A stretch of DNA of 64,000 nt, from positions 82,026,001 through 82,090,000 of the forward strand of contig CM097886.1 of assembly GCA_044892525.1 (NCBI GenBank), written 5' to 3'. The notes under the pieces were generated by a model. That model was given only the letters and a program-made list of their open reading frames with translations. It had not been told where the DNA came from and made no database searches. The translations under genes were made by a program, and so were the position numbers. The stretch is from Schmidtea polychroa. Its lineage: Eukaryota. Each line of letters begins with the position of its first letter. Position 1 is the stretch's first letter. Positions 25,264 through 42,949 of this stretch are shown piece by piece.

Positions 25264-25298
<35 letters not shown>

Positions 25299-25719: not shown

Positions 25720-25887
25720 TCTTAATTTATATATACTTTTCAATCCTTATCTAATTTTATTTTCATATTAATTATCCCCATCATTATATACTATTGATAC
25801 CGCGCTTATATAAAAATATAGAATACTGTTATATAAATAAATATTACCTACTTACTTTTTACAATCTATATACAGTCATAATCCTTT

Positions 25888-26890: not shown

Positions 26891-29800
26891 TTTGTCTCCA
26901 TTTCTTTGTTGGTAAAAAGTAGACATACCCTCTGTTTTCCATTATTCGTCTTTTCTTCTTGCTTTATTTGGTTTCTCGGGTTGTTTTCCTCTTTTTTCCT
27001 ACTCGCGTCGTTATTTTCTTGATTATTCTCCTCTGATTTCTCTTTCTCTTTATTCCCGTTTCGACTTTTTCCATTATTATCGTCGTCTTTATCGTCTTTA
27101 TCTCCCCCGCTATCGTTTAAAATGTCGTCCTCGACATTTATATCATTCAACAATCTGCGGTATGCCGTTAGCACCCTGTTTCTTGCTAATTTTGCTTCGA
27201 ATTCGAACTCCTTTCTGCCTGTTGCTACATGTCTCTTTCTATTCCATTCTTTCACTAATTCTCTTAATTGTATCCGACGATGTTTCCCGATTCGCTTTTG
27301 TTCGTTTAGATTCTGCGTGAATTTGAGATCTTCCCTGTTTAATACGATCATTATGATTTTCGGAGTTCCTCCTTTTGTTAGTGTATTTTTAACCATAGCA
27401 TTTTCTCCGTTTTCGTAGAACTCATTTATATTTATTGCATATTTATTGCTTTGTGGTATTCTCCATGTTAGCAATAACTTCATGGCTTCTAAGTTCATCC
27501 GTATCGTGTTCCATTGGAATTGTGACGTGTTTTTACAGATATTTTCTACCTCAGCTCTTATAGCATTTTTACAAATGAATCTAATCATTTCCAAGTTTGG
27601 TTGTATCGTTGCCCAATCCATGGTAGATTTTCCTTCGTTTGATATTTCGTCAAGTCTCGAACCTGATTGATGTAGTATATGTAAGGTTTTCGGGTGTATC
27701 TTTGTTATTGCTGCATACATCATTGCTGTTTCTCCTTGTTCATTTTTTGTATTAGATTTTTCTCCGAAGTCTCTAAGGATTCTTATGATGGTTATTGCTC
27801 TGTTTTCTTTTGCTGCTAAAATGGCTTGTTGTAATGGTGTTCTTGAGTCTTTTGTTGGTAAGGTGAATGCTAGTGGTATAAATGTTTTTATTTTTCCTAT
27901 GTCTAGATTTGTGGTCTGATCTCTTGCGTAGGTGTGTACTGTTTTGGTTATTTTTGCTAGTATCGCTTCATCTGATAGATCTTGCATTTCTTCAAAGAAT
28001 ACTTCTTTAGCCTTGCGTACTACTATCTCTTGGTCGGAGTTTATTGTCTTTGGTTTACTTGTTGTTGCTATATCGGTTATTGGTTGATCGACTTGTTCCT
28101 CAGACTCTCTTGCTTTTACTTTCTTTATTTTTATCTTTTTCTTGTTCGAACTGTTAATGCGTTCCTCCGCCGTTAGAACTTGAATAATACTTAGGTAGTT
28201 TTCTCGAATGTTATTCATAGTTTCCATCATATGTAAAACACTCACGGTGTCCCAAAATTTTACTTGTACTTTATCGGTAAATTGAGATATAGCTTTTTCG
28301 AAGTTGGTAATTCGTTTTCTGATTAGTTGTTCGTCTTTGTGATTTGAGAACTTTATGCCACGTTGTAGTAGTTGATTTGGAATTTCGAATAGGTGATGTC
28401 CTCTCATCGCTTCTCTCATCAAGGTGTTTTCCCCTTTGGTAAATGTTTCGTTTATATCTACCATATAATCGTTTTTTATCGGGTTCCTCCATGCAATTAG
28501 TATTCCAGTAATTGTTGTTAATTTCTCTTTGATTGCAGTTAATAGCCCGTCATACATGTTTCCTATCTCTCTATTATCCTCGTATGATATTAGATCTACT
28601 AAGATTATGAAGGCTTCCGTACTTTTCCCTTCGATTGCATGATGTAGTGCATTTTTCTGGCTGTGGTCTTGTGTGGTTATCTTTGACCCAGTTTCAAGTA
28701 ATGCGATGATAATATCTTTAGCTTTATCCCGATTGGCTGCAATCATTAGTGGAGTGTAACCTTGGTTGTTTTCTTGATCCGTCGAAATGTTACAATCGCG
28801 AAATGCTTCGATCGTTTCCAGTATTTGTTCATTATTCCCGACCTTTAAAAGTTTGTGCAACGGTGTATCTCCATAATGGTCTGTGATCGTGAATAATATA
28901 GGCCATTGACCTTTAACTACCCTGAGCAATGGGTGTGTTCTTTCTCGATTTGCATAGTTTTCTATCATTGTTAGCAGACCTCCCAATATCTCAAAATCTA
29001 ATCTGTCTTTTGCCCATCCAGGCATTTTAACTTTTACTTCCTTTATGATTTTCTCGGCTTCTGATGGTTGTAACCCTAATCGATTACCTGTTGGTTCGTT
29101 TATCTGCTGTAACATGTTTATTCTATACGTTTGTGATCTTGTCGTTAATGTACGTCCTTCTGGCTGACTGGTGGCGGTTTTCGGAATTGGCTTACATCGT
29201 GCAACATTTACGTATATTGGTCTTGTAAAAGGGTTGTTCACTAATCGTACTCTTACATTAGTTTCTCCGACGAATAGAATCTCATACGGACCTTTACCGT
29301 TTCGTTGTAATTTTTTGGTGGTTCCTGGAATTAATTCTGGTGTTTCGATCATCACCCAATCGCCTGTTTGAAACGTATGCTGTTTGACGTTTTTCTTTCT
29401 ATCATGTAGATCTTTGTAACTTTCTTGATAAAATTTTATATTCAATCCTGCAGTTTCCCAGATTTCCTGCATTCTTTCCTTGAACTTGGTTACATAATCG
29501 TCTATTTCCATGTATTGTGATATTGGTGGCTGATATTCTAAATCCATTGGCATATTGCATTCTCTGCCGTACATCAACTTAAACGGACTCATCTTTGTGG
29601 ACGCGTGAATCGACATTCTGTAAGCCATTAAACATAATTTTATATACTCGTCCCAGTCGCGTTGATGACGATCGACATAATTTGATAACATTTGAATCAG
29701 TGTTCCATTGAATCTTTCTGTCATACCATTAGTTTGTGGATGGTACGGTGATGTTCTTAATTTTGCGATCTTGAAGTAGTTGGTGACTTCGCTCATTATT

Positions 29801-32800
29801 TCGCTCATGAAATTTGTTCCTTGATCAGTTAATATCTGTTTTGGTGTTCCATATCGACAGCATATCTCCTCTACTAGTATTTTTGCGATTGTTTTTGCTT
29901 TCTGATCTGCCATAGCGAATGCTTCGGGGAATTTCGTCAAATAATCTGTGATTACCAATATATATATATTTCCTCTATCTGATTCTGGTAGTGGACCGAC
30001 TACGTCCATTGGTATCATTGTCATTGGTTCTGCTGGTACTGGCATTGGCTTTAATGGTGCTCTCCATTTTGTTCCCGTGTTTTTCCTGGTTGCGCAAGTT
30101 ATGCAATTTTTCACCCATTCCGTTACATCCTCGGTCAATGTAGGCCAAAAATACTTTTGTTTCATTCGTGCCAACGTCTTTTTAGATGACATATGTCCTC
30201 CGAGTCTTCCGTCATGGTATTGTGTTAGCAGCTCTTTACGTCTATTCTCGGGAATGCACATCAGTCTTTTCTCGCCATCCATTATCAACAACCAGTCTTT
30301 CTCGATAATATATCGATGTCGATGTTTATCCATATGCTCCTTCAGTTTTTGATCTTTCTCATATACCTCTGCTTTCCCTGTTTTCACATATTCAATGATT
30401 TGCTTCAACTCTGTATCCTCTTGTTGGTCTTTCCGTAATTGGCAAAAATCTAAATCTTCTGCTACCATCAGACATATTCGTTGCATTTCGTGGTCTACTA
30501 AATCTGGAAAGATAAATCTGGACATACAATCCGCATTGGCATTCGCTCTTCCCGCTTTGAATTTTATGAACGGTGAATATTCTTGTAACTGCATTGCCCA
30601 TCGCATCAATCTACTTGAAGCTTCTTTGTGTTGACCAAGCCATACTAATGGTTGATGATCCGTGGTGATACATATTTCGTGTCCCCATAACAAATATCGA
30701 AAATGTTTAATTGCTTGTATGATTGCTAACGCTTCTCTCTCGGTTACGGAATAGTTTTTCTCGTGCTTTTTAAACGTTCTGCTGTAGTATCCAATCACTC
30801 TTTCTTTTCCCTCTTCATCCAATTGTCCTAATATTGCTCCGGCTGCATATCCACTTGCATCTGTTGCTAATAAGAACGGTTTCTTGAAATCAGGATGTAC
30901 TAGTATTGGGGCTTCAATTAATTTATCTCGCAATGTCTCAAACGCTTTTTGTTGTTCTGCACCCCAAATAAATGAAATATCCTTTTTCACTAATTCCTGT
31001 ATTGGTTTCGCAATGCCTGCATAGTTTTTGATGAATTTTCGATAATATCCGCATAATCCGAGAAATTCTTGAACTTGGGTGACAGTTTTTGGTGCTGGAC
31101 ATGTTTTTATTTTTTCTATGTTTCTTGGATCTGGTTCTTTGCCTTTTGCTGACACTATGTGTCCTAAGAACGTAACTTTTTCTTTTGCCCAATCACATTT
31201 GGATGGTTTAAGTTTCAGTTTCCATTGTCGTAATCGAACGAACACGTTTCTGATATCTTCCAAATGTTGTTCGAATGTTGCTGAATATATTAATAAATCA
31301 TCAATATATACCATACACTGCTTGATCCCGTGTGTGACAAAATTCATACATCTCTGGAATGATGCTGGGGCATTGGTCAGTCCGAACGGCATTTTCCTGA
31401 ATTGGTATAGATCTCGGCCCAATGTGAATGCTGTTTTCTCTTTGTCTTCCTCTTTAACTTTGATCTGCCAATATCCGCTTTTTAGATCTAAAGATGTAAA
31501 ATATGCGGCCCCCTGCAGCATAAGTAACATCTCATTGATGTCTGGTAATGGGTATGTGTCTCTTTTTGTTACTGCATTTAATTTCCGATAATCGATACAG
31601 AATCTCTGAGTACCATCTTTTTTCTTCACCATGACTACTGGAAATTGCCATGGCGAACAACTTGGTTCGATCACTTGTGCATCTAGCATTTTTTGTACTT
31701 CGGCTTCGGCTATCTCTTTTTGCTTCTCTGCTAGTTTGTATGGACGTAGTGCGATTGGAGTTTCGTCTATTAATGGTATTGCGTGTAGTGTAACATCGCA
31801 TGCTCCCAAATCTAAATCCGAAATTGCGAATATATCTTTATATTCTATCAATAATTGTTGAAGTCTTTCCTTTTCTTCTCCCGTTAGCAAGGTGCTATCA
31901 ATTATCCATAATTCGTCAGCTTTCGTTGTTTCGTTGGTGATTTTTGGTAATTCGATGTCTATCATGGGTGTCAATCTACCCAATCTTTCATTTTCATATA
32001 TGATCTTATCTTCTTCCTCGAAATTTGTGATGTTAATTGGTATTTCCCCGTCTTCATTTATTGTTATTATTTCTCTTGCTAATGGTAATTCTCGTCGTTT
32101 TTCGAATGATTTGCTTGGCTCAAAAATGACTTCTCCTTCCATTCCTGTATCCACTTTTATTTGACATATCATCTGTGATTTTGCGGGTACAATTATTTTC
32201 TCCGGACATCTAATTATTGCGTTCATCTTGCATATTCTACCCATTTTGTCTTTTAGACACATTGTTGTTAAATCGATTACTACTTCCTTGAACAATTCCG
32301 GCATTAAATCCGTTCCGATTATACATGGTTCACTCAGTTTGGGTATCACCGCTAGATACGTTTCAATTTCGTTATCCTGATATCGTAACGTAGTCCACCA
32401 TCTTCCTACTACGTCTACGGTTTCTTTACTGCATGCAATAATATGGATAGTTGTTTGTTCGATATCTTTCCAACATTTACTGGGTATTTGGTTTATTGCT
32501 ATTGCTGATACATTTGCTCCGGTATCTATCATTGCACTTGTCTCTTTCCCGTTGATTTGGATCATGACTGTTACTGCCGCACCTCCTGGTGAACTCATCA
32601 CTGCTATTGTTCTTACGTCGTCCGCTTGGTCTACACTTTTCGTTCTTCGGGTCGGCATATAGTTCATATCTGGTTGACTTGGTAATTGTGGATACATATT
32701 TGGTGTCATGGTCAAAGCGGTTTGTTGTCCAACGATATCTGGTGGTATATAACTTCCGTTGGCTATCCAGGTATTTGTTTTTTCTTTTTCCCAATATGGT

Positions 32801-35800
32801 GCTGTTTCTATTGGCTTTTCATTCGGGTTTCTACTTGGATATGGGTATTTGTCATTCCCGTTGTCGTCATCATCACTATCGCTGCTGTTTGATCGATTCC
32901 TAAATCTGTCTAAGAATTTTGGTTTGTTCTTTTTCAGTTGCGTCCTTGTTGCTTCATCATACATTGTTTTCCGAAATCGTCTACCGACTTCCTCGTCGGT
33001 TCCTTTTATTTTTGTCAATATTTTGATCAATCGTTTTATTCTATGTATGTCCTTAGAATGACCGTGCAACACCATTGTTTTTGCCAAAAATGGTAGAAAA
33101 CCTACTATCAATTTCCAATTTACCTTCTTTTCTCTCTTATAGATATCAAAACACGCTAACATTTGAGTCAATATTACTCTAACAATCTGTATAATAAGAA
33201 TGATTCCCAATATTCCTGCCATCATTTGGCCGAACACTAGAAATCTTCCCCACATTGCTTTCATCATGTTTGACGTGGCTTGTTGAAAATGATCGGGTGA
33301 CAATAATAGTTCGTAATTGGGGCCTGACTGGAAATTCGTTCCCCCAGTTATGGTAACCATATTCGATAGAATGGATTCCCGTCTTGCTGGGAATAATACG
33401 TTTAATCGTGCCGTTTCTAAATCCTCGGGTGAGTACATACCGGCCTTTGACACATCAATTGGTTTGAAATCTTGTTCTGTTGCGAGTTCTATCAGTCCAA
33501 ACTTTTTAGGCTCTTGTACTTCGGTTTTTACTGGTAACATTATCCATTTCCCATCGGGTTTTTCATATAACGGTCCGTATGCATTTGAACAGTTAAAGGT
33601 GTTCGGATAAAATCCAATTGGGTTCATTATCCTAGTGACGGGTTGAACGAATCTGTTTCGCCCTTTGTAGCTAATTTCTAACTCGTTTGCACATTTCCCT
33701 GGTGGAATTGTGGGCTTTCTTGGCAGTCGCGCAAATGTCTTGGTACATGCATATGTATACATTACCTCTCCCACCATTCTACCAAAATGTCCATCCGGTA
33801 ACGGGAGTGATGGCATTGTGTTATCTGGGTGTGTTATTGCGATGGCTAATTTTGTTTTTAGTATCTCTTTATTCAATGAACAGTCATTTTGTATAAGATC
33901 GTAATACACTTTTTGCATTGTCGTTTGTCCTCGGTGAAATAAAAAGTCCATTTTGTTATTGGCGTACAGGTACAATTTTACGTCCTCTGTTGCTACCTTT
34001 CCCACTGCTCGGTCTATTACTTGCCTGGACATGTAGATACCTGCGTAGTTCGTTCGATATACTATACTGTCACATTTGGTGGTCTCTTTCTCTCTGATAA
34101 ATCTCATACCGATATCTGGGTCATCTGTAATTAATGCCGTTGGTGTTTTTTGGGTTGTGAGTCTCTTTTCTTTGGGGGATGGCGGAACTGGTTTCCCATT
34201 TCGCATCCTTACGTTTCCATTCTCTTCATCGTCATCCTCGTTTTCGTAAATTTCTCCTTTTACTTCATTGAATAGAGCACTTTTTAACAATTGGAGTCGG
34301 CATTTTTGGGTGTTAGCTTCATATATTATAGTCGAAATTCCCGTTCTACACACGTTTTCCGTAGCTCGGCATGCTGGGTTGGTTTTCATTTGATAGTTGT
34401 TTGCGTCGAATTGTGCTTCGTATTCCTTCAACTCCACTGTGTAGGACTCAATTACTACTACTCCTGATATCACCTCTCCTCTGATCGTATATGTGCCTCC
34501 GTTACATGATCCATCAGTTGATTTTACTCGTCCGGCGACATAGATACTTTCTGTCTTGATCATTCCGCTTTGTCCGTGTATTGTTACTCCATCCCTGATT
34601 CTCATCGCTCCGGTTCTAAAAAGCTCTTTACAGTCTTCCCGTTGTATAGGTACTATTTCTTTATCTAATCCAGGTAATATGAGGGTTGAATATGAGTATT
34701 GTCCACAGTAATATGCCAACACTTTCTTCGATACTACGCATTCTCTAGCTTGCGTTCTAATGAAATCTGATTCTTGGTATACGTGATAGGAGACTTTCTT
34801 CTTTACTATATCTAATTTATTCGGAGATGCCTGTCTACATTCCTCTATATCTCTCAGGGAGTATCTTTCTCCTATTATCGAATTGTCACAGTCGTAAATT
34901 GTAAATCCAGCTGCTCCACTGGTGCAGAGCATCCATATCATCATGGTCATCATTAGTGAATTAATCGACGCTTTTCTGCTGGCTGGGTCTTTCAATGGCA
35001 ATTCCCATTCCAGCTCGTTTAGCAATTTCTTCAACCGAATTTGCATTGATCTCTCTTGCTCGTTTTTTCGTGGCGCTTGTATGAGTCTTTTCCACCCACC
35101 GGCGCGGATAATATGTGGTTCGATTGTATTTTCAATGATTGTGACGGTCATTTCTACATGATTTGCGAATTGTTTGTTAGGTATTTTCCTTGCTGCTAAT
35201 CCCATCAAATTGTACATTAGATACGTTAATACTACTAAATGATGTTCGTCGTCGTTTGCGTTTAAAGTTAATTGTTCAATTACTCTTCTTGTCTCTTCCC
35301 AATCGGTTTTAGTGGTTTTGGTCTTCTCTTTGATTAATTTCGGAATTATTCCGGATATTGTATTCCATAGTTGTCTGGCGTCTACGCTTGCTACTTTTCG
35401 TTGCCATAACCGTCTCAATTGCGGGTTCGTTATTATTAGCATATCTTTTACTAGCTCTCGTATCCATTTTTCGCCTCTTTCGATAGTTGGCTGGGCCTCT
35501 TTTAGATCCCACACTATTTTATCCAGTTTCTCCAATCTGACTTGTCCTTGTTCTTGTTTCAACTGTTCTCTGGTTTTAAATTCCGGTTTTTCTCCTTGCT
35601 TCTTGGGTCTCCCTTTTGCCCGTTTCTCCATCATTGTTCCGGCTTCCCTGGTATTTTCATAATTCGGGTTTCTCTCGTTATCCGTTCTTGGCAATGAGCT
35701 ATCGTTGTTTCTCAGCCATTCGTTCCATTCGTCTATTATTTTGTCCGTTTGACCTTCTGGTGTTGCTTTCGTTGGTACTTTCTGTCGTTGGAATTGTTCG

Positions 35801-38800
35801 TCGGTTTCGGTTTCTGTTGTATTATCGATAATCCCCTTGATACTTAGCTTATTTGGCTGCTGATAGCTAGTTGACGGTTGGCTTGTTGTCCATATTTCGG
35901 CTCCTGTCGGCCATCTTACCAGAATTGGTGATCTTTCTCCAGCTCCTTCATCGCTGTCTTCCAATATAATTTCCTCGATTTCCTCGGTTTCATTCGATTT
36001 ACTCGTCACTTTGTTAGGGCTTGGTGTACTCAAGCTACCTTTCGTAGGTTTACCGGATTTGCTCTTCCTTTTAATCGGTTTTCCCAATGTTTCTGCCATT
36101 GTCAATACATTGATCTCCCCCAATCTCATGGGTGTTATTCCGACATCTGCATTATCATCCAACGATTTTCCGAATAGTTGTAGGTGAAATGGAGTTTCGT
36201 ATGCTAATTTCTTTTTTAACTCTCTGATCTTTGTTGTTGGATGTACTTCTGTATCCTCAATGCTTTTGTCGGGATACTTGACTCGGATACGATACCTTTC
36301 CTGGGTATCTTGTGCCCATTCTTGGTTTCTCCATTTCCTAATAATTTGTTCTAGCTGTTCTGGGTACCATTCGTTATATTGTCTGTATTCCTCAATCGCT
36401 TTCGCCATTTCTCTTAGATTGTGGATATTCTCTGATGTCTTTAGGATGATGTTAGCCAATGCTATTACTTGACGTTTTTGATTTTTTGCTCCCGTTGCTA
36501 AGATATCACCTAATTGTTTATATCTTTCCTTCTCTTCTCGTTCTCGAGCTTCCATCGCTTCTTCGCTGTCCATATCGGCATATTCGCGTTCTTTCTTTCT
36601 CATCGCATGAATATGTCTGGTTTCCGTTTCACTTTCCGATGTAACATCCGTTTCGCTTTCGTCGTCCGATGTCGATTCTATTTCGTCCTCTTCGTATTTT
36701 GGAGGTTCATCTTCCTCTTCTTCTGATTCGCTTTCTATCTCACCAATGTCTGTTTCCACGAAAATCCCTTTCCTGATTTCCCATTCTTTGTTTTCGGCAT
36801 TCCACATCCTTTCCCATGGGGTTCGTCTGCAGGATCTAACACTTAGTTTCTTTATTTTTCCTTGAAGCTCTTTTTCTTTTAGCCACTGTTGATGAATTTC
36901 AATTATCTCTACTGATTTTTGATATAGCGTTTTCATCCTGTCTCGTATTTCTTTCTGGTATGTTATATCTCTTGTTCGGAATTCGTCCATGGGCAATATT
37001 CTGATGATTTGATGATTATCCCACATTCCCATTTCGCTTAGCGAGGTGTCGTCTTCGGCCCGTAATATTATTTTATCGTACATCATGACTACATCATCTA
37101 TCATCCCGTCGCTACTCTCGCTTCGTACTTTTTCCGTTATCTCTTGGTTTATCTTGGTTACTAAGTCATCCACCGTACTCTGATTACTCATCTTTATTCG
37201 TCGTTTCTCCTCGTTTGGTAACCATATGGTTATTTCTAATTTCTGCGGTTGCGTTTCTTTTACTCTTCCGTATTTGTGGATCAAATTTATGGTTCTCCAA
37301 TCACTCATCCTGAGCAATTCTGTATCTCGTAATCGGCTCATTAGCTCATGCATGTCTGCAGTTCGTCTTGTTATGAGCAAATCCCAGTTATCCTCAACTT
37401 GTTCTTGGATTTGCTTGATTAATTTATCTAGATTTCGTCGCAAGGTGCATTGTTTTATTTGTTCCAGCTTCAGCTTGATGTTAAAGTCATACTCGGCCTT
37501 GGCGTCTTTAGCCCATTCGTGAATATTTGCTGGTTGCTTCTCTTTATACAATTTCAATATTTGAGTTTCTCCTGGCCAGATCAATGCATCTATTAGGTGC
37601 ATGTCTGGTTTGATTTGTTCTCCTTGATATTGATACAGGTATTCTTTCTTTCTCGAGCTGCCCAAATGTTCTCTTATCCAATCGAAAAGATCGTCTGTAA
37701 CTGCATTTTTTATCCATATTCTCTCGAGTCCTTTACTTGTTCCGATTTTTATTACATAACGTGTTGTCTCCGCTTGTTTCATTTTTTCCATATACTTCTT
37801 TATTATCGCTTTTTCCTCGTTTGGTATTAGATCTTTTTCGTTTCTTTCTAGTTTCATTATCTTTTGTATGAAGCGTCTGTATGGTATGATGTCAATGAAT
37901 TCCTGGTTTCTTACCACCACTGGAAGTATTTCCTTTACTTGTTTTATCGATTCTTCTCTTTCTTTTCTCAATTTCATTTCGATATTCTCGTCTTCGCTTT
38001 CACTTGTTACGTCGCTTTCACTCTCCTCTTCATCTGTTCCGATCTTCTCTCTTAGTTGGTTGATATTTTCATTTAACTGCAATATTTCTCCACCAAGGCT
38101 ACTCACATAATCCTCATCGTCATCTGTTGACAATACCTTCTTTGTCGTCCTCATCATATTAATTCGTAAATTTCTCATTCTTGGTACTTTCTTTAACTTT
38201 TTGTTCTCGAATAACGTTAGCTCCTCTGAGTTCGATTCTCGTATCATATCATGATTTAGATGATTAATCTGTTTTTCATTTTCGTTATTCTCTGCTTCTG
38301 CTTCTGTTTTTGTTTTCTCATTTTCTCTTTCGATTTTATCTTTTATCTTTTTCCAAAATATTTTCTGAATTCTCTGATTTCCTTTCAGCGGTGTTGTTGA
38401 ATTTTCCTTTTTTGCTGCTGTAATTGTTTCCTTCGGTTTCTCTGGTTCGCTCGTAGGTACAACTCTTGGATTTTTACCATAGTTGTAACAATATTGCTCC
38501 TTTATCTCCTTTACCATCCTCATCATATTTATTCGTAGTGGTTGTTCTTGTCGCTGTTGAATTCGCTCTCTTTTTATCCTCTCTTCTTCAGCTTGTAGTC
38601 TTTGCCATTCTTGTGCATGTTGTTGCACTTCATAATTGTTAAGATTCTCGGTGCTTCTCATCATGCGTATATTCTGGGTTTGTTGTGGTACTTGCTCTTG
38701 TCTCGGTCTCATCATTTGTTGCATCATCTGCTTCATTTGTGAAATTTCTTGCATCACATTCATTTGCTTTCCCTCACTAGGATTACTTTGTCGTTGCGGA

Positions 38801-40314
38801 TTTGGTGCATAGTTATTATTTCGCTGTGGTGGTCGTTGCTGTTGGCTCCTTTCTCGACAGTCTCTTGAGATATGACCTGGTTGACCGCAGTTAAAACATC
38901 CTCTCGATTGGCATATATTTTCCGTGTGTCCTCGTCGTCCACACCTATTGCAATTTGCGTTTCGGTAACAATCTCTATCCCAATGTCCTGGTTTACCGCA
39001 TGTTCGGCATTGTTTGTTATCGTTCATATTTCGTCGATTATTAAAGTTGTTTCCATTGTTCGAGTTGTTGCGTTCACTGTTATTCCCGTTTGATCGTCCT
39101 TGTGGTGGTTTGAAGATTTGATGTGCTCCTGGTATAAACTGATTCATCTTGGGTTCATGATTATTGTTATCCCCATTTTCCGTTTTCACCGTTGCTGTTG
39201 CGATTCTTCCCTCCTCTTGCATGACGTTCATTTGTGCTGGGAGGTGTAGTTCGCATCTTGTGGCCCAATCTATGGCTTCTTCTAGTGTTTTACACATTTG
39301 ACATCCCACCGAGGCCCTTACCTCTTCTCGGCGTAGTCCTTCTATGAAGTACCCAATTAAGTTTTCCTCCGGCAAGTTTCCGTTCATGGCCTTCTTTGCC
39401 AATCTTCGCAATTCACTTGCGTATAACGTAATTGACTCGTTTGCTCTTTGTTTTCTACTTGCCAGTTCACCTAACGCTTGATTTATCGGTTTGCTAGCTC
39501 CGAATGTTTTTCTCAAAAATGTTTTGATGTTTTCCCAATTGTCCAATTTCGTATTTCTTTCTTTTGCTTCTAGATACACTTCGAGTGCGCTATCGCACAA
39601 AAACAGAGGCATTCGTTTACTAATTACTTTGGACGTCCATCCACACACATCGATATAGACTTCAAAGTTGGTTATGAACGTTGCCAACTTGTTCGCATTC
39701 CCGTTGAACGGTTCGCCTCTAAATTTCTCTTTATATTCGTCGGTTTTTGCTACATTCATCTTGATTGGTTCTTGAAATGCTATTATTTCTTTTAAATTTT
39801 CTAGTGATGTAGCCAAACTATGGACGGATAATTCTTCTGTTGACCCGGTTAGGTTGTTTGTTATATCGGATAGACTTTCTCTACTTCTAGATCGACTGGG
39901 CGTATGTCCGGCTGTGGGGTTTTCTTGATCGTATATCGGTGTTTTGTGGGGTCTTTTTGCTCCTTGTGATATTCCTCTCTGCTGCCTAAATGATCGTCCT
40001 CTTTTGAGTTGATCTAATTCGTCTCCTGAAAATAATACGTCTCCTGGCTTACTTGAAGATCTAAGGTTGGGTTTATCCGTGATTTTCCTTTTACTCTTTT
40101 CTGTCTTTTCACGTGGATTTTCTACGGTTAGCGTCTGCTGAATTGGTCGAGTTTGGTTCTGATATTGTTTTCCTTTGTGCGGGTTCTGAATTGCTTTTCC
40201 TGGGTTGTTTGTATATTCTCTGGATTCCTCTTGAGCTGCTTCTGAATTGACTTGGTTGGATTGATGTCTACAATGAAAATATGATATCGTGTTGCCTTTG
40301 CTTACACGAATCAA
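25888..40314 (-). CDS. 4,808-codon Gag-UBL-Bcl2-Env-PR-RT-RH-IN-ANK-TM polyprotein
   Basis: Single stop-free frame of 14.4 kb; the first ATG is only at codon 186 (39759), so the true start is unresolved. Confidence 0.95.
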   Translation of the reverse strand: MIRVSKGNTISYFHCRHQSNQVNSEAAQEESREYTNNPGKAIQNPHKGKQYQNQTRPIQQTLTVENPREKTEKSKRKITDKPNLRSSSKPGDVLFSGDELDQLKRGRSFRQQRGISQGAKRPHKTPIYDQENPTAGHTPSRSRSRESLSDITNNLTGSTEELSVHSLATSLENLKEIIAFQEPIKMNVAKTDEYKEKFRGEPFNGNANKLATFITNFEVYIDVCGWTSKVISKRMPLFLCDSALEVYLEAKERNTKLDNWENIKTFLRKTFGASKPINQALGELASRKQRANESITLYASELRRLAKKAMNGNLPEENLIGYFIEGLRREEVRASVGCQMCKTLEEAIDWATRCELHLPAQMNVMQEEGRIATATVKTENGDNNNHEPKMNQFIPGAHQIFKPPQGRSNGNNSERNNSNNGNNFNNRRNMNDNKQCRTCGKPGHWDRDCYRNANCNRCGRRGHTENICQSRGCFNCGQPGHISRDCRERSQQQRPPQRNNNYAPNPQRQSNPSEGKQMNVMQEISQMKQMMQQMMRPRQEQVPQQTQNIRMMRSTENLNNYEVQQHAQEWQRLQAEEERIKRERIQQRQEQPLRINMMRMVKEIKEQYCYNYGKNPRVVPTSEPEKPKETITAAKKENSTTPLKGNQRIQKIFWKKIKDKIERENEKTKTEAEAENNENEKQINHLNHDMIRESNSEELTLFENKKLKKVPRMRNLRINMMRTTKKVLSTDDDEDYVSSLGGEILQLNENINQLREKIGTDEEESESDVTSESEDENIEMKLRKEREESIKQVKEILPVVVRNQEFIDIIPYRRFIQKIMKLERNEKDLIPNEEKAIIKKYMEKMKQAETTRYVIKIGTSKGLERIWIKNAVTDDLFDWIREHLGSSRKKEYLYQYQGEQIKPDMHLIDALIWPGETQILKLYKEKQPANIHEWAKDAKAEYDFNIKLKLEQIKQCTLRRNLDKLIKQIQEQVEDNWDLLITRRTADMHELMSRLRDTELLRMSDWRTINLIHKYGRVKETQPQKLEITIWLPNEEKRRIKMSNQSTVDDLVTKINQEITEKVRSESSDGMIDDVVMMYDKIILRAEDDTSLSEMGMWDNHQIIRILPMDEFRTRDITYQKEIRDRMKTLYQKSVEIIEIHQQWLKEKELQGKIKKLSVRSCRRTPWERMWNAENKEWEIRKGIFVETDIGEIESESEEEEDEPPKYEEDEIESTSDDESETDVTSESETETRHIHAMRKKEREYADMDSEEAMEAREREEKERYKQLGDILATGAKNQKRQVIALANIILKTSENIHNLREMAKAIEEYRQYNEWYPEQLEQIIRKWRNQEWAQDTQERYRIRVKYPDKSIEDTEVHPTTKIRELKKKLAYETPFHLQLFGKSLDDNADVGITPMRLGEINVLTMAETLGKPIKRKSKSGKPTKGSLSTPSPNKVTSKSNETEEIEEIILEDSDEGAGERSPILVRWPTGAEIWTTSQPSTSYQQPNKLSIKGIIDNTTETETDEQFQRQKVPTKATPEGQTDKIIDEWNEWLRNNDSSLPRTDNERNPNYENTREAGTMMEKRAKGRPKKQGEKPEFKTREQLKQEQGQVRLEKLDKIVWDLKEAQPTIERGEKWIRELVKDMLIITNPQLRRLWQRKVASVDARQLWNTISGIIPKLIKEKTKTTKTDWEETRRVIEQLTLNANDDEHHLVVLTYLMYNLMGLAARKIPNKQFANHVEMTVTIIENTIEPHIIRAGGWKRLIQAPRKNEQERSMQIRLKKLLNELEWELPLKDPASRKASINSLMMTMMIWMLCTSGAAGFTIYDCDNSIIGERYSLRDIEECRQASPNKLDIVKKKVSYHVYQESDFIRTQARECVVSKKVLAYYCGQYSYSTLILPGLDKEIVPIQREDCKELFRTGAMRIRDGVTIHGQSGMIKTESIYVAGRVKSTDGSCNGGTYTIRGEVISGVVVIESYTVELKEYEAQFDANNYQMKTNPACRATENVCRTGISTIIYEANTQKCRLQLLKSALFNEVKGEIYENEDDDEENGNVRMRNGKPVPPSPKEKRLTTQKTPTALITDDPDIGMRFIREKETTKCDSIVYRTNYAGIYMSRQVIDRAVGKVATEDVKLYLYANNKMDFLFHRGQTTMQKVYYDLIQNDCSLNKEILKTKLAIAITHPDNTMPSLPLPDGHFGRMVGEVMYTYACTKTFARLPRKPTIPPGKCANELEISYKGRNRFVQPVTRIMNPIGFYPNTFNCSNAYGPLYEKPDGKWIMLPVKTEVQEPKKFGLIELATEQDFKPIDVSKAGMYSPEDLETARLNVLFPARRESILSNMVTITGGTNFQSGPNYELLLSPDHFQQATSNMMKAMWGRFLVFGQMMAGILGIILIIQIVRVILTQMLACFDIYKREKKVNWKLIVGFLPFLAKTMVLHGHSKDIHRIKRLIKILTKIKGTDEEVGRRFRKTMYDEATRTQLKKNKPKFLDRFRNRSNSSDSDDDDNGNDKYPYPSRNPNEKPIETAPYWEKEKTNTWIANGSYIPPDIVGQQTALTMTPNMYPQLPSQPDMNYMPTRRTKSVDQADDVRTIAVMSSPGGAAVTVMIQINGKETSAMIDTGANVSAIAINQIPSKCWKDIEQTTIHIIACSKETVDVVGRWWTTLRYQDNEIETYLAVIPKLSEPCIIGTDLMPELFKEVVIDLTTMCLKDKMGRICKMNAIIRCPEKIIVPAKSQMICQIKVDTGMEGEVIFEPSKSFEKRRELPLAREIITINEDGEIPINITNFEEEDKIIYENERLGRLTPMIDIELPKITNETTKADELWIIDSTLLTGEEKERLQQLLIEYKDIFAISDLDLGACDVTLHAIPLIDETPIALRPYKLAEKQKEIAEAEVQKMLDAQVIEPSCSPWQFPVVMVKKKDGTQRFCIDYRKLNAVTKRDTYPLPDINEMLLMLQGAAYFTSLDLKSGYWQIKVKEEDKEKTAFTLGRDLYQFRKMPFGLTNAPASFQRCMNFVTHGIKQCMVYIDDLLIYSATFEQHLEDIRNVFVRLRQWKLKLKPSKCDWAKEKVTFLGHIVSAKGKEPDPRNIEKIKTCPAPKTVTQVQEFLGLCGYYRKFIKNYAGIAKPIQELVKKDISFIWGAEQQKAFETLRDKLIEAPILVHPDFKKPFLLATDASGYAAGAILGQLDEEGKERVIGYYSRTFKKHEKNYSVTEREALAIIQAIKHFRYLLWGHEICITTDHQPLVWLGQHKEASSRLMRWAMQLQEYSPFIKFKAGRANANADCMSRFIFPDLVDHEMQRICLMVAEDLDFCQLRKDQQEDTELKQIIEYVKTGKAEVYEKDQKLKEHMDKHRHRYIIEKDWLLIMDGEKRLMCIPENRRKELLTQYHDGRLGGHMSSKKTLARMKQKYFWPTLTEDVTEWVKNCITCATRKNTGTKWRAPLKPMPVPAEPMTMIPMDVVGPLPESDRGNIYILVITDYLTKFPEAFAMADQKAKTIAKILVEEICCRYGTPKQILTDQGTNFMSEIMSEVTNYFKIAKLRTSPYHPQTNGMTERFNGTLIQMLSNYVDRHQRDWDEYIKLCLMAYRMSIHASTKMSPFKLMYGRECNMPMDLEYQPPISQYMEIDDYVTKFKERMQEIWETAGLNIKFYQESYKDLHDRKKNVKQHTFQTGDWVMIETPELIPGTTKKLQRNGKGPYEILFVGETNVRVRLVNNPFTRPIYVNVARCKPIPKTATSQPEGRTLTTRSQTYRINMLQQINEPTGNRLGLQPSEAEKIIKEVKVKMPGWAKDRLDFEILGGLLTMIENYANRERTHPLLRVVKGQWPILFTITDHYGDTPLHKLLKVGNNEQILETIEAFRDCNISTDQENNQGYTPLMIAANRDKAKDIIIALLETGSKITTQDHSQKNALHHAIEGKSTEAFIILVDLISYEDNREIGNMYDGLLTAIKEKLTTITGILIAWRNPIKNDYMVDINETFTKGENTLMREAMRGHHLFEIPNQLLQRGIKFSNHKDEQLIRKRITNFEKAISQFTDKVQVKFWDTVSVLHMMETMNNIRENYLSIIQVLTAEERINSSNKKKIKIKKVKARESEEQVDQPITDIATTSKPKTINSDQEIVVRKAKEVFFEEMQDLSDEAILAKITKTVHTYARDQTTNLDIGKIKTFIPLAFTLPTKDSRTPLQQAILAAKENRAITIIRILRDFGEKSNTKNEQGETAMMYAAITKIHPKTLHILHQSGSRLDEISNEGKSTMDWATIQPNLEMIRFICKNAIRAEVENICKNTSQFQWNTIRMNLEAMKLLLTWRIPQSNKYAININEFYENGENAMVKNTLTKGGTPKIIMIVLNREDLKFTQNLNEQKRIGKHRRIQLRELVKEWNRKRHVATGRKEFEFEAKLARNRVLTAYRRLLNDINVEDDILNDSGGDKDDKDDDNNGKSRNGNKEKEKSEENNQENNDASRKKEENNPRNQIKQEEKTNNGKQRVCLLFTNKEMETNMMIMILVLTMVEMITAQGGMRTIKEAKETENKDNKEEELKQEKKKQVQEQQWDLKEEWDLKERCILGRCMSRAYQRLVLKNEDAEPITEVRIQEAYRNRDGKRITKVKGKEVHLGKGGEVVITQLQPRKEHKVCIARLRPGEDCLQYVIQQQPPKEYTICIWRKDTARECRRYPGKRGKKRKINDEKDEQGKRKKNSEKHQDNYVSEEEMEKIQKMAKEGMNEEIARIREMMKGNGKDGNLKSTEAISTLTSKEKAEIISVKQMMWISGIIITGAFLIITGGTIKIIKDRRHRGELEMARIRNFQHHVKRPSNIKQEQWVEAWNAQRPPSSRI
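27320..28900 (-). CDS. Polyprotein domain: two blocks of ankyrin repeats
   Basis: YGDTPLHKLL, QGYTPLMIAA, QKNALHHAI (28350-28900) and SRTPLQQAI, QGETAMMYAA, EGKSTMDWAT (27320-27860). Confidence 0.85.
29200..30240 (-). CDS. Polyprotein domain: integrase (HHCC, DDE core, GPY)
   Basis: YHDGRLGGH..KYFWP..CITC; MDVVGPLP; LTDQGTNF; YHPQTNGMTERFN; KGPYEI. Confidence 0.97.
30520..31800 (-). CDS. Polyprotein domain: reverse transcriptase and RNase H
   Basis: RFCIDYRKLN, LDLKSGYWQI, MPFGLTNAPASFQ, YIDD (31297-31308), FLGH; ATDAS, YSVTEREALAI, TDHQPL, NANADCMSR. Confidence 0.98.
32290..32580 (-). CDS. Polyprotein domain: aspartic protease
   Basis: AMIDTGANVSAI and C-terminal IIGTDL motif. Confidence 0.95.
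33070..34965 (-). CDS. Polyprotein domain: signal peptide plus chuvirus-like (class III) envelope glycoprotein
   Basis: SLMMTMMIWMLCTSGAAG|FTIYDC..YSL.DIEEC, YYCG, AGRV..DGSC.G, C.LNKEIL, GEVMYTYAC, ELEISY..FVQPVTRI, AGMYS.EDL..LFP, WGRFLVFG..GILGI TM: the Cys and motif order I recognise from chuvirus G proteins. Confidence 0.85.
35080..35470 (-). CDS. Polyprotein domain: Bcl-2-like helical domain
   Basis: IENTIEPHIIRAGGW resembles Bcl-xL BH2 LNDHLEPWIQENGGW; a hydrophobic BH1-position helix HLVVLTYLMYNL lies upstream but lacks NWGR. Confidence 0.7.
36100..37764 (-). CDS. Polyprotein domains: three ubiquitin-like folds
   Basis: 37550-37764, 36994-37242, 36100-36297; the third reads RIRVK..EVHPTTKIRELKKKL..LQLFGKSLDD vs ubiquitin EVEPSDTIENVKAKI..LIFAGKQLED. 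Confidence 0.65.
38857..39759 (-). CDS. Polyprotein domain: Gag capsid-like region and three CCHC zinc knuckles
   Basis: PFNG..FITNFE..GW, KQRANESITLYASELRRLA, FIEGL, TLEEAI; knuckles CRTCGKPGHWDRDC, CNRCGRRGHTENIC, CFNCGQPGHISRDC at 38857-39009. Confidence 0.95.
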
Positions 40315-40992
40315 TCATTCCTTTTTGCCACATTCAAGCACAGACACCGTTTTAGGGCCTCTGTTATACTTCTCTTCATTTCCCCTCATACGCTTCTTCG
40401 CGGAATATAATTACCCATCAACCCATATTTTTCGTCGATTTTAAATTATCTATTTGGGGTAGTAACAATTATCTATATAGTCGTATAAATTATCTATAGT
40501 TAGCATTTATAATATCGATAGGTCGTTGTCAGTTACTGCTTATTACCTCCCATATTTTCTTAATCCTTTTACGCGGTTCCGCTATTTTACTTAATCTTTC
40601 ATCTCTGTTTCCCCTTATTTGGTTCTACTCTGTAACCAAAACAAAATTCGTTTAACCGGTTTAAACCAAAAAAATTCTGTAGAACTTTGTCTACTTATCT
40701 GGGATCCCTTTTAATTAATTAATCACCTTCCTCTTTTACTCATCATTTATTCTCACTTATTCTTTATTTTCATTATCTCTTTAATTCATTTTCCTTTTCA
40801 GTTTCTCTTTCTCACTGAAAAAAAAAGTTTCGTCATTACCTCCCACGAGCTCGTTTAATCCTTTCTAAATTCAAATACTATATTTCAAACTCAATTTGCT
40901 TCTAGCTAGCTTTAATATTCCATCTCACTAGTAATTTAAATGTTATCAACTTGTAGCTTGAATGCTATCTCACTATTACTTTAGGCCTTTAC

Positions 40993-41430
40993 GACTGGCT
41001 GGCACTTTTCAACAGCTCAATCTTCTTCATCTCCGAACTGGCTGGACTTTTCACAGCTCAGTTTTAATTTTCCCTGACCGGCTGGACTTTTCAACAGCTC
41101 GGCCTTAATATCTCCGACTGGCTGGACTTTTCACAGCTCAGTTTCAATTTCCCTGACCGGCTGGACTTTTCAACAGCTCGGCCTTAATATCTCCGACTGG
41201 CTGGACTTTTCACAGCTCAGTTTCAATTTCCCTGACCGGCTGGACTTTTCAACAGCTCGACCTTAATATCTCCGACTGGCTGGACTTTTCACAGCTCAGT
41301 TTCAATTTCCCTGACCGGCTGGACTTTTCAACAGCTCGGCCTTAATATCTCCGACTGGCTGGACTTTTCACAGCTCAGTTTCAATTTCCCTGACCGGCTG
41401 GACTTTTCAACAGCTCGGCCTTAATATCTC
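40993..41430. repeat. Tandem array in the 5' leader: 79-bp dimer (39+40) x5 plus one degenerate monomer
   Basis: Core GGCTGGACTTTTCA(A)CAGCTC 11 times; unit starts 41116, 41195, 41274, 41353 are exactly 79 apart. Confidence 0.97.
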
Positions 41431-42012
41431 TAAACTCTGCGTGCTTCCGTTCCTTTTCTGTCTTTATTCTATACTGTCATCTTCCTATTTTTACTTTTAT
41501 TTGTCGACTTAATCTGTACCGCTTTGGAAGGTTTCCCCTTTCCCCCCTTGCTCAAAACGCAAAACGATCGCATTGATCCATTTCTACATTGGTATGGTGA
41601 TCAGCCATACCGCAGAAACTTTTCAATATTCGCGATGGTACCTCGCCTTACATCTCTTACTCGGGGTGATCGGTTGTCCCTTCCCAAATGGTTCCAATAT
41701 CGTACCTCCCGAAGGTGGCTCGGTTTATTCCCCCTTTAACACTATGATGGGACTAGTTCCACTTTAAAAAATCAATTTAAATTTTTAAAATGCCCTTTCT
41801 TCATGGTGAAAATTATAACAACACAAATCAATTTATAACTTCGTATAATGAAATGAATACACAAAAAGGATTTATTAGTTATTTACTCCACATTACAGAT
41901 AATATATGCTATCATTATAAAACATTACCGAATTAATTCAGAACAAAAATAAAAAAATGTTTAATCTAATTGTTAATCATCCAATTTCCTTCACCGAGCG
42001 ACGATCGCGTAC

Positions 42013-42931: not shown

Positions 42932-42949
42932 ATCCCGGCTGAGCCCCCA
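42932..42949 (-). promoter_or_regulatory. Primer-binding site, tRNA-Pro type
   Basis: Minus strand TGGGGGCTCAGCCGGGAT, 16/18 identical to the classical tRNA-Pro PBS TGGGGGCTCGTCCGGGAT, 7 nt from the 5' LTR. Confidence 0.85.

What the first reader, a model, noticed from the sequence alone, without database searches (positions are those of the whole stretch)
33070..34965. Complete chuvirus-like envelope glycoprotein embedded in frame between Gag and protease (gag-env-pol order)
Seen: an internal signal peptide, a ~610-aa Cys-rich ectodomain, a TM anchor and a tail sit upstream of PR in the same stop-free ORF. Known: env genes of errantiviruses, retroviruses and the Bel/Pao elements that captured chuvirus G lie 3' of pol. 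Inference: the polyprotein would be threaded through the ER and cut by signal peptidase and PR, as flavivirus and alphavirus polyproteins are. This would give an enveloped, possibly cell-to-cell mobile retroelement with an architecture I do not know from any described family. An acidic/basic insertion ending PKEKR|L (34162-34255) could be a maturation loop.
Basis: partly seen in the sequence, partly recalled or inferred. Interest (0 to 1): 0.93.

Follow-up and report, generated by a model that had tools for sequence, protein, structure and literature searches.

The report
Burro-type giant retroelement with in-frame envelope
The window holds an intact 30.6-kb giant Ty3/gypsy retroelement whose single 4,808-codon reading frame really does carry a chuvirus-like, herpes-gB-fold envelope glycoprotein between Gag and protease, but this gag-env-pol layout was already published for the planarian 'Burro' elements and for related worm and bryozoan elements.

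Summary
The finding lies on the minus strand, inside one stop-free ORF (40314..25888, 4,808 codons). That ORF belongs to a 30,574-bp LTR element (16597-47170) with 4,215-bp LTRs that are 99.93% identical, TG..CA termini and a 4-bp target duplication.

Residues 1784-2415 match Pfam PF24664 (Monjiviricetes fusion glycoprotein) at E=2e-74. All 14 ectodomain cysteines are conserved with free-standing viral G proteins. An AlphaFold2 model (pLDDT 86) matches only herpesvirus gB in the PDB (E~1e-14) and chu-like virus glycoproteins in BFVD (E~1e-39). The segment is therefore a class III fusogen, placed Gag-...-Env-PR-RT-RH-IN-ankyrin.

Ten diverged metagenomic polyproteins have env in front of pol in one ORF. 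All 15 embedded relatives aligned keep a hydrophobic stretch with a signal-peptidase-type site, and most lack a Met there. This fits co-translational ER threading. The proposed KEKR maturation site is not conserved.

[quoted passage not shown] It was described again for GAG-ENV-POL gB-type elements of flatworms, nematodes and bryozoans (bioRxiv 2023, eLife 2026; Sacco 2022). How Env is actually expressed is still untested.

The parts
16597..47170 (-). Whole LTR retroelement, 30,574 bp, flanked by a 4-bp target-site duplication AAAC (47171-47174 and 16593-16596)
   Evidence: Self-BLAST of the window; LTR ends and flanks read directly; no other copy or fragment in the flanks
42957..47170 (-). 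5' LTR, 4,214-4,215 bp, termini TGTTGG...CCAACA
   Evidence: 99.93% identical to the 3' LTR, with 2 mismatches and 1 gap; termini read
16597..20811 (-). 3' LTR
42933..42949 (-). Candidate primer-binding site (TGG-initiated 17-mer, 7 nt downstream of the 5' LTR); inference only
   Evidence: Read; no matching tRNA was tested
40993..41430 (.). Array of 5.5 copies of a 79-bp tandem repeat in the leader between the 5' LTR and ORF1
   Evidence: tandem repeats are drawn in the published Burro map (PMC6431247)
25888..40314 (-). ORF1, 4,808 codons without a stop (first ATG at 39759): Gag-...-Env-PR-RT-RH-IN-ankyrin polyprotein. Zero stops or frameshifts
39328..39609 (-). Gag capsid-like domain (Retrotrans_gag, aa 236-329)
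   Evidence: Pfam PF03732, E=1.4e-9
38857..39009 (-). Three CCHC zinc knuckles (aa 436-486)
   Evidence: Pfam zf-CCHC; regex count of 3
35092..35247 (-). Weak Bcl-2-like match just upstream of Env (aa 1690-1741); inconclusive
   Evidence: Pfam PF00452, E=0.1, below cut-off; single-sequence AF2 pLDDT 46, unusable; a BCL2-like motif at this place is reported for Burro
34906..34956 (-). Internal signal-peptide-like stretch of Env (aa 1787-1803), predicted cut after AAG
   Evidence: Sequence features. All 15 embedded relatives aligned have a hydrophobic stretch at this place, most with small residues at -3/-1, and most without a Met
33235..34905 (-). Env ectodomain (aa 1804-2360, about 557 aa, 14 Cys), class III fusion glycoprotein fold
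   Evidence: PF24664, E=2e-74; 14 Cys invariant or at least 90% conserved in 72 sequences; AF2 pLDDT 85.9; Foldseek to gB and chu-like virus G
34162..34255 (-). Variable acidic/basic surface loop ending KEKR; not a conserved cleavage site
   Evidence: Low pLDDT at 241-270; the loop is present but its sequence and the dibasic motif are not conserved in relatives
33148..33234 (-). Env transmembrane anchor (aa about 2361-2389), followed by basic residues (KREKK)
   Evidence: Kyte-Doolittle peak 2.5-2.8; helix 557-611 in the model; conserved in relatives
32569..33147 (-). Env cytoplasmic tail and linker to PR (about 190 aa), with a conserved post-TM amphipathic motif and a YPQL motif
32293..32568 (-). 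Aspartic protease (aa 2583-2674, DTGA)
   Evidence: Pfam RVP; motif found
31153..31629 (-). Reverse transcriptase (aa 2896-3054, YIDD)
   Evidence: Pfam RVT_1, E=4e-36
30577..30966 (-). RNase H (aa 3117-3246)
   Evidence: Pfam RT_RNaseH and RT_RNaseH_2
29737..30255 (-). Integrase (H2C2 zinc finger plus catalytic core, aa 3354-3526)
   Evidence: Pfam PF17921 and PF00665
25891..29217 (-). C-terminal extension of ORF1 after IN: ankyrin repeats (from aa 3833), a charged region, and two hydrophobic stretches near the end
   Evidence: Pfam Ank_2, E=5e-18, 3 stretches; hydropathy
23869..25258 (-). TRAF-like accessory gene (RING finger plus MATH domain), present as two overlapping ORFs in different frames (one break, or an unrecognised intron)
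   Evidence: Pfam zf-C3HC4, and TRAF-mep_MATH at E=1.5e-26; ORF list
21043..23648 (-). Three further accessory ORFs (345 aa and 233 aa charged, predicted coiled-coil by eye; 211 aa with a hydrophobic stretch). No Pfam match

Best explanation
This is a young, fully open copy of a Burro-type giant Ty3/gypsy (Metaviridae) LTR retroelement. The host is most likely a dugesiid planarian. Its single ORF1 encodes Gag, several accessory domains, a complete class III fusion glycoprotein of the chuvirus/Monjiviricetes G family, and then PR-RT-RNase H-IN-ankyrin.

The most likely mechanism is inferred, not shown. Env is made as part of the polyprotein. The internal hydrophobic stretch (aa 1787-1803) acts as a signal sequence and is cut by signal peptidase after AAG. 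The ectodomain enters the ER lumen. The single TM anchor stops transfer, so the tail and PR-RT-IN stay in the cytosol, where the element's own protease frees them. The topology is the same as in flavivirus or alphavirus structural polyproteins. The trimeric gB-like Env would then give capsids an enveloped, cell-to-cell route.
For: Shown by tools:
- The ORF is intact and the domain order is as stated.
- LTRs are 99.93% identical, with TG..CA ends and a 4-bp TSD.
- PF24664 matches at E=2e-74.
- The representative library holds 1,030 homologues. The nearest (29-47% identity) are long polyproteins; the next tier is 620-720-aa stand-alone glycoproteins aligned end to end.
- All 14 ectodomain Cys are conserved.
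- The AF2 model has pLDDT 85.9 and a 48-residue central helix.
- The top 50 PDB fold matches are all herpesvirus gB, E down to 2e-14. The top BFVD matches are chu-like virus glycoproteins, E down to 6e-39, TM up to 0.64.
- A profile built from the alignment hits 33 gB chains at weak E-values, from about 0.01 to 0.4.

For the polyprotein route:
- Env lies N-terminal to PR-RT-IN in one ORF in 10 diverged relatives, and Gag lies N-terminal to Env in 4 of the relatives compared.
- All 15 relatives aligned keep a hydrophobic stretch, most with small -3/-1 residues, right before the conserved (A/G)(Y/F)DC motif. Most have no Met there.
- Basic residues follow the TM, and there is only one strong TM between the signal stretch and PR.
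- There is no 2A-like motif.

Identity as Burro-type:
- Size, ORF1 length, three CCHC knuckles, ankyrin, RING/MATH-TRAF, leader tandem repeats and the in-frame env all match the published description (PMC6431247).
- BURRO1 RNA is expressed, enriched in intestine, and held down by SMEDWI-2/piRNAs (PMC8532177).
Against: - No protein-level or RNA-level data were available, so the cleavage sites, ER insertion and stoichiometry are inferred.
- This copy has four Met codons at the start of the signal stretch, which would also suit separate initiation.
- Only one N-glycosylation sequon lies in the ectodomain, which is few for a viral glycoprotein.
- Identity to the Burro reference sequence and the host species could not be tested. 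No near-identical protein is in the searched collections.
- Some Burro1 features were not found here: MATH inside ORF1, BIR, and a dUTPase-like region.
- The Bcl-2-like match is below threshold.
Confidence: 0.8

Rival explanations
1. Env is not made from the full polyprotein. It is made from a spliced or internally initiated sub-genomic mRNA that starts at the Met cluster at the head of the signal peptide, as retroviral env is. The in-frame continuity with Gag would then be incidental, and the product would be Env or Env-Pol, trimmed by PR.
For: Four Met codons (MMTMM) sit exactly at the start of the hydrophobic stretch in this copy, and several sit there in relative P0007. Retroviruses and Drosophila errantiviruses express env from spliced RNA (established knowledge). 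In locus L004, gag is called as a separate ORF upstream of an env-pol ORF.
Against: Most relatives have no Met near the signal stretch. No stop separates env from PR in any of the 10 env-pol polyproteins compared. Such an mRNA would therefore still give an Env-Pol fusion and still need the same membrane topology. No splice evidence could be obtained here.
Confidence: 0.25
2. The env segment is a relic with no present role. It was captured once and is carried along, and the element spreads only inside cells, as an ordinary LTR retrotransposon does.
For: Only one N-glycosylation sequon is present. The published work gave no sign that blocking BURRO1 RNA or reverse transcription changed the smedwi-2 phenotype, although that does not bear on Env. 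The thousands of genomic copies could be explained by intracellular retrotransposition alone.
Against: There is no stop in 632 codons inside a 4,808-codon open frame. All 14 ectodomain Cys, the TM and the post-TM motif are conserved with exogenous viral G proteins and with relatives at 24-47% identity. The confident full-length fold indicates long-term purifying selection.
Confidence: 0.1
3. The gag-env-pol order is an assembly artefact, or a nested insertion of an endogenous chuvirus glycoprotein gene into an ordinary gypsy element.
For: Giant repeats are hard to assemble. The window has two N runs elsewhere. Endogenous chuvirus G copies are common in invertebrate genomes (PMC7642597, PMC10084718).
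Against: The frame is continuous across both junctions. The same order recurs in independent contigs from several samples at 24-47% identity. It is also published for Burro and other GAG-ENV-POL elements.
Confidence: 0.02

Closest known systems
Burro / GYPSM1 giant Ty3/gypsy elements of the planarian Schmidtea mediterranea, and the Burro-like element of Dugesia (Girardia) tigrina (Jurka 2007; Grohme et al. 2018; Arkhipova & Yushenova 2019, PMC6431247)
   Same: - Total length over 30 kb with multi-kb LTRs.
- One ORF1 of about 4.8-5.1 thousand aa.
- Gag with three CCHC knuckles.
- Env in frame between a BCL2-like region and PR.
- PR-RT-RH-IN followed by ankyrin repeats.
- RING, MATH_TRAF and coiled-coil accessory modules.
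- Tandem repeats in the leader.
- AT-rich host DNA.
   Different: ORF1 here is 4,808 codons, against 4,873 reported for Burro1. MATH_TRAF lies in downstream accessory ORFs rather than inside ORF1. No BIR or dUTPase-like match was found. Sequence identity to the reference could not be tested. The 2019 paper likened the env to gypsy Env (F-type); here the fold is clearly gB-type class III.
GAG-ENV-POL 'errantiviruses' with HSV/gB-type ENV in Platyhelminthes, Nematoda and Bryozoa (PMC13524379), and the non-canonical nematode ERVs of Sacco et al. 2022 (cited there)
   Same: Ty3/gypsy pol; a gB-like class III ENV placed between gag and pol; a conserved cysteine framework; a furin site that is not always conserved.
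   Different: Those elements were searched for as separate ORFs, with gaps of up to 2 kb allowed, and they are of ordinary size. Here everything is fused in one giant ORF with many accessory domains. That paper does not mention Burro or Schmidtea.
Glycoproteins of Jingchuvirales (chuviruses) and other Monjiviricetes, Pfam PF24664
   Same: Same sequence family, aligned end to end at 21-27% identity. Same cysteines, same TM and post-TM motif, same predicted fold.
   Different: In those viruses G is a stand-alone protein with an N-terminal signal peptide, encoded by a negative-strand RNA genome. Here it is embedded in a retroelement polyprotein and carries a longer variable loop.
Mosquito Bel/Pao elements with a captured chuvirus glycoprotein (Dezordi et al. 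2020, PMC7642597)
   Same: An LTR retroelement that captured a chuvirus-like class III glycoprotein.
   Different: That is another superfamily (Bel/Pao). Here the Pfam domains and nearest Pol relatives are Ty3/gypsy.
Flavivirus and alphavirus structural polyproteins (works-like comparison only)
   Same: Internal signal and stop-transfer sequences thread a single polyprotein through the ER membrane. Host signal peptidase cuts on the lumenal side and a viral protease cuts on the cytosolic side.
   Different: There is no homology. Those are RNA viruses with class II fusogens. For this element the processing is inferred, not shown.

Membership tests
Class III viral fusion glycoprotein (herpesvirus gB / rhabdovirus G / chuvirus G; Pfam PF24664) | Sequence match to the family profile above the curated cut-off | tested here: met
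   251 bits against a cut-off of 27, E=2.2e-74, two stretches (the better one covers profile positions 244-579 of 653)
Class III viral fusion glycoprotein (herpesvirus gB / rhabdovirus G / chuvirus G; Pfam PF24664) | Fold match to a solved class III fusogen | tested here: met
   AF2 model pLDDT 85.9. The Foldseek top 50 PDB hits are all gB, with E from 2e-14 to 8e-12, probability 1.00 and about 640 aligned columns. TM is only 0.2-0.36, as expected for multi-domain proteins in different conformations
Class III viral fusion glycoprotein (herpesvirus gB / rhabdovirus G / chuvirus G; Pfam PF24664) | Long central helix (domain III) for a trimeric coiled coil | tested here: met
   Helix 331-378 in the model. 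The weak profile hits to gB fall on this region. Trimer formation itself was not modelled
Class III viral fusion glycoprotein (herpesvirus gB / rhabdovirus G / chuvirus G; Pfam PF24664) | Signal peptide at the N-terminus of the ectodomain and a single C-terminal TM anchor | tested here: met
   Hydropathy, the -3/-1 rule and conservation in 15 relatives. No dedicated predictor was available
Class III viral fusion glycoprotein (herpesvirus gB / rhabdovirus G / chuvirus G; Pfam PF24664) | Two internal hydrophobic fusion loops at the tip of domain I | not tested
   Model coordinates cannot be read with these tools
Class III viral fusion glycoprotein (herpesvirus gB / rhabdovirus G / chuvirus G; Pfam PF24664) | Membrane-fusion activity | not testable with these tools
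   Needs bench work
Burro giant Ty3/gypsy retroelements of dugesiid planarians | Total length over 30 kb with multi-kb LTRs | tested here: met
   30,574 bp; LTRs of 4,215 bp
Burro giant Ty3/gypsy retroelements of dugesiid planarians | One ORF1 of about 4.8-5.1 thousand aa: Gag with CCHC knuckles, env in frame before PR, RT-RH-IN, ankyrin | tested here: met
   4,808 codons; domain order from Pfam; three CCHC knuckles, as reported for S. mediterranea
Burro giant Ty3/gypsy retroelements of dugesiid planarians | BCL2-like motif directly upstream of env | tested here: inconclusive
   Pfam Bcl-2, E=0.1, 13.6 bits against a cut-off of 31.4; AF2 single-sequence pLDDT 46; no PDB sequence hit
Burro giant Ty3/gypsy retroelements of dugesiid planarians | RING / MATH_TRAF / coiled-coil accessory modules | tested here: met
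   RING and MATH are in ORFs downstream of ORF1. Their placement differs from Burro1, but the literature says it varies
Burro giant Ty3/gypsy retroelements of dugesiid planarians | dUTPase-like region between PR and RT; BIR domain | tested here: not met
   No Pfam match, even at E<=1, in aa 2675-2895. No BIR anywhere in ORF1 at E<=0.01. These were HHpred-level calls in the literature, so a negative hmmscan result is weak evidence
Burro giant Ty3/gypsy retroelements of dugesiid planarians | Nucleotide or protein identity to the Burro/GYPSM1 references; planarian host | not testable with these tools
   No planarian genome or Repbase entry is within reach. The exact-protein look-up found nothing, and the nearest proteins are at most 49% identical
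Ty3/gypsy (Metaviridae) LTR retrotransposon | PR-RT-RNase H-IN order, gypsy-type integrase zinc finger, LTRs with TG..CA ends and a 4-6 bp TSD | tested here: met
   The nearest Pol relatives carry Ty3/412/K02A2.6-like names
   The Pfam domains are the gypsy-type ones (RVP, RT_RNaseH_2, Integrase_H2C2), and env lies 5' of PR in the same ORF

The most novel reading that the evidence does not exclude
A whole, old clade of Ty3/gypsy elements expresses its envelope only as an internal piece of a Gag-Env-Pol (or Env-Pol) polyprotein. It would use an internal signal peptide that needs no start codon of its own and may double as a membrane anchor for the upstream (BCL2-like) domain. That is a flavivirus-like processing scheme not demonstrated for any reverse-transcribing element. 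The layout is published. The expression mechanism and its conserved signals are, as far as the papers read here show, not.
Probability: 0.5. Interest if true: 0.55.

Novelty: already known. Interest (0 to 1): 0.3.

Why it matters
The element shows that a retroelement can carry a complete class III viral fusogen inside its main polyprotein. It is young and fully open, in a host family where Burro RNA is expressed in somatic tissue and held down by piRNAs.

- The env is gB-type class III, not F-type as the 2019 text suggested.
- The internal signal peptide and its cleavage-type site are conserved across diverged relatives that lack a start codon there.
- The proposed dibasic maturation site is not conserved.

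How Env is released from the polyprotein remains an open question that can be tested.

Tried and rejected
1. A search with the env segment alone among proteins of similar length found nothing through the word index. The index-free search then found 1,030 relatives.
2. phmmer of env against PDB sequences gave no hit. Only the profile and the fold search reached gB.
3. An exact look-up of ORF1 from its first ATG found nothing on record, so the source genome could not be named.
4. The Bcl-2-like region gave four negatives. The Pfam match is below threshold. There is no meaningful PDB hit. Relatives show no homology upstream of env.
5. The KEKR loop as a maturation site was rejected because it is not conserved.
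6. A 2A-like self-cleaving motif is absent.
7. Grohme et al. 2018 and Sacco et al. 2022 are not held in the library. They are cited only through papers that cite them.
8. The supplements of PMC13524379 are not held, so the flatworm species in that study could not be checked.
9. The consensus line printed by the alignment tool was not used.
Full report
**What is there.**
The finding's coordinates lie on the minus strand, inside one stop-free reading frame, 40314..25888. It has 4,808 codons and its first ATG is at 39759. Self-comparison of the window shows two direct repeats of 4,215 bp, at 16597-20811 and 42957-47170. They are 99.93% identical, with 2 mismatches and 1 gap. Read on the minus strand they begin TGTTGG and end CCAACA. 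The same four bases, AAAC, flank them on both sides. The unit is therefore a 30,574-bp LTR retroelement that inserted recently. It sits in AT-rich DNA (GC 0.23-0.30 outside, 0.37-0.41 inside). The flanks hold no other copy or fragment.

**Domain order.**
Pfam places the following along ORF1:
- Retrotrans_gag at aa 236-329.
- Three CCHC knuckles at aa 436-486 (also counted).
- Monjiviricetes_fusion (PF24664).
- Retroviral protease at aa 2583-2674, with DTGA.
- Reverse transcriptase at aa 2896-3054, with YIDD.
- RNase H at aa 3117-3246.
- Integrase zinc finger and core at aa 3354-3526.
- Ankyrin repeats from aa 3833.

ORF1 has no stops or frameshifts. Downstream of it, on the same strand, lie accessory ORFs. 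One is a TRAF-like gene with a RING finger and a MATH domain (E=1.5e-26). It is present as two overlapping ORFs in different frames, which means one break or an unrecognised intron. Three further ORFs have no family match.

**Check of the observation.**
Residues 1784-2415 (34965..33070) score 251 bits against PF24664, whose cut-off is 27, at E=2.2e-74. The segment starts with a positively charged stretch, then a 13-17-residue hydrophobic stretch, then AAG|F. An ectodomain of about 557 residues follows, with 14 cysteines and one N-glycosylation sequon. The strongest hydrophobic segment of the whole ORF follows (Kyte-Doolittle 2.5-2.8), then KREKK, then a 190-residue tail that runs into the protease. 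The acidic/basic loop at 34162-34255 is present.

**What the glycoprotein is.**
- An index-free HMMER search of 1.84 billion representatives found 1,030 relatives at E<=1e-3 and 490 at E<=1e-10.
- The nearest relatives (29-47% identity) are long polyproteins with the match inside them. The next tier is several dozen proteins of 620-720 aa, mostly 21-27% identical and aligned end to end, which is the size of chuvirus-type G proteins. One such cluster carries the UniRef name 'Glycoprotein' in a beetle genome.
- In an alignment of the window's segment with 71 of these proteins, nine of its ectodomain cysteines are invariant and the other five are at least 90% conserved.
- AlphaFold2 on that alignment gave a confident model: mean pLDDT 85.9, pTM 0.62, and a 48-residue central helix. 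The only long low-confidence stretch in the ectodomain is the acidic/basic loop.
- Foldseek against the PDB returned herpesvirus gB for all 50 top matches (E from 2e-14 to 8e-12, probability 1.00).
- Foldseek against BFVD put glycoproteins of chu-like and related negative-strand RNA viruses on top (E from 6e-39 to 1e-29, TM up to 0.64), followed by rhabdo-like G proteins and gB.
- A sequence profile of the alignment hits 33 gB chains at weak E-values, from about 0.01 to 0.4, over the central-helix region.

The segment is a chuvirus-family G protein with the class III (gB-like) fold. No match to the F-type gypsy Env family appeared in the Pfam scans.

**Do relatives share the order?**
Yes. Five polyproteins of 2,855-3,865 aa from ENA and JGI metagenomes match env at 37-40% identity and pol at 42-44%. 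In all of them env lies in front of PR-RT-RH-IN in the same ORF. Further representatives, and a 4,844-aa cluster member, behave the same way. In all, ten proteins have env N-terminal to pol. Gag lies N-terminal to env in four of the relatives compared. None of those examined has env after pol. Pfam on two of them gives CCHC, then fusion glycoprotein, then protease, RT, RNase H and integrase. In one locus gag is called as a separate ORF in front of an env-pol ORF. The layout is thus an old, conserved trait of a clade. It is neither an artefact nor a one-off.

**How it most likely works (inferred).**
The order of signals is topologically coherent. Gag and the accessory domains are cytosolic. A signal-like stretch comes next, with its positive side towards Gag. 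The ectodomain is lumenal. One stop-transfer anchor follows, with basic residues on its far side. The tail and the enzymes are then cytosolic again. An alignment of the junctions in 15 embedded relatives shows, in every one, a hydrophobic stretch directly before the conserved (A/G)(Y/F)DC motif, most with small residues at -3/-1. A Met is present there only in this copy and a few others. That favours an internal signal sequence cut by signal peptidase over a separate start codon. No 2A-like motif exists.

The element's protease, or a host enzyme, must cut between the anchor and PR. Where it cuts is unknown. The main rival is a spliced sub-genomic mRNA starting at the MMTMM cluster. It cannot be excluded without RNA data, but it would still yield an Env-Pol fusion with the same topology. 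The loop exists in relatives, but its sequence varies and none carries the dibasic motif. KEKR is also not a canonical furin site.

**Comparison with what is known.**
- Arkhipova and Yushenova (2019, PMC6431247) describe the Burro elements of Schmidtea mediterranea. They have an internal region of up to 25 kb, a total over 30 kb, thousands of copies and a 4,873-aa ORF1. Gag has three CCHC knuckles. RING, Smc-like, MATH_TRAF, BIR, BCL2-like and ankyrin motifs are present.
[quoted passage not shown] - The window's element fits this description feature by feature. Three things differ. MATH_TRAF sits in downstream ORFs. BIR and the dUTPase-like region were not detected. The Bcl-2-like match is only E=0.1.
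- A second paper (PMC13524379, eLife 2026, preprint 2023) reports Ty3/gypsy elements with gB-type ENV arranged GAG-ENV-POL in Platyhelminthes, Nematoda and Bryozoa. It cites Sacco et al. 2022 for nematode elements formed by capture of an RNA-virus glycoprotein gene.
- BURRO1 RNA is expressed, enriched in intestine and de-repressed when SMEDWI-2 is lost (PMC8532177).
- I could not test identity to the Burro reference or name the host. No near-identical protein is in the collections, and no planarian genome is within reach of the tools.

**Verdict.**
The claim that the architecture is undescribed is wrong, so the finding is already known.

- The env is gB-type, not F-type.
- The internal signal peptide and its cleavage-type site are conserved across relatives that mostly lack a start codon there.
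- The dibasic loop is not a conserved maturation site.

The expression and processing of Env from such a polyprotein is still untested. That is the one part that would interest a specialist.

All queries were contiguous stretches as they stand. The N runs at 3281-3452 and 63116-63257 were left alone.

Noticed in passing
window 23869-25258 (-): A TRAF-like accessory gene (RING finger, then a MATH/TRAF-C domain at E=1.5e-26) lies inside the element, downstream of ORF1. It is split into two overlapping ORFs in different frames. It looks like a captured host signalling or ubiquitination gene. In the published Burro1 the MATH domain is inside ORF1.
   Followed up: partly
window 25891-29217 (-), ORF1 aa 3700-4808: About 1,100 residues follow the integrase. 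They hold ankyrin repeats (three Pfam stretches) and a long Lys/Glu-rich region. Two hydrophobic stretches lie near the C-terminus (aa 4476-4495 and about 4741-4763) and could form a second membrane-inserted module.
   Followed up: no
window 32692-32703 (-), ORF1 aa 2541-2544: A YPQL motif, which has the form of a YPxL late-budding motif, lies in the Env tail about 40 residues before the protease. That is the position p6 occupies in retroviral Gag. A PPKY motif is at aa 1204. Neither was checked for conservation.
   Followed up: no
window 17136-17897 (-), and the equivalent place in the 5' LTR: The 3' LTR carries a 253-aa ORF with no family match. The same ORF is shorter (209 aa) in the otherwise 99.93% identical 5' LTR, so it is probably not constrained.
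   Followed up: partly
window 40993-41430: 5.5 copies of a 79-bp tandem repeat (96% matches) lie in the roughly 2.6-kb leader between the 5' LTR and ORF1.
   Followed up: no
window 20001-42000: The internal region has a very strong strand asymmetry: AT skew of -0.22 to -0.47 on the plus strand, so the sense strand is A-rich. The flanks have none.
   Followed up: no
L002 (1-10000) and L004 (17000-24900): Two metagenome contigs from sample ERZ25039515 carry relatives of the element next to bacterial-type genes (MacB/ABC transporter, TetR, Mnh antiporter, luciferase-like). Another relative (P0010) is deposited as a protein of a Flavobacteriaceae MAG. These are probably chimeric contigs or mis-binned eukaryotic DNA.
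   Followed up: no
P0004 / L003 (aa 1822-1910 and 2209-2304): This relative has two aspartic protease domains between Env and RT: a DDI-like 'gag-asp_proteas' domain directly after the Env tail, and then the retroviral one.
   Followed up: no
P0155 (4,844 aa): A second giant polyprotein exists among the metagenomic relatives. About 1,200 residues of unknown content lie between its Env and its protease, so gigantism and accessory-domain gain are not limited to the window's element.
   Followed up: partly
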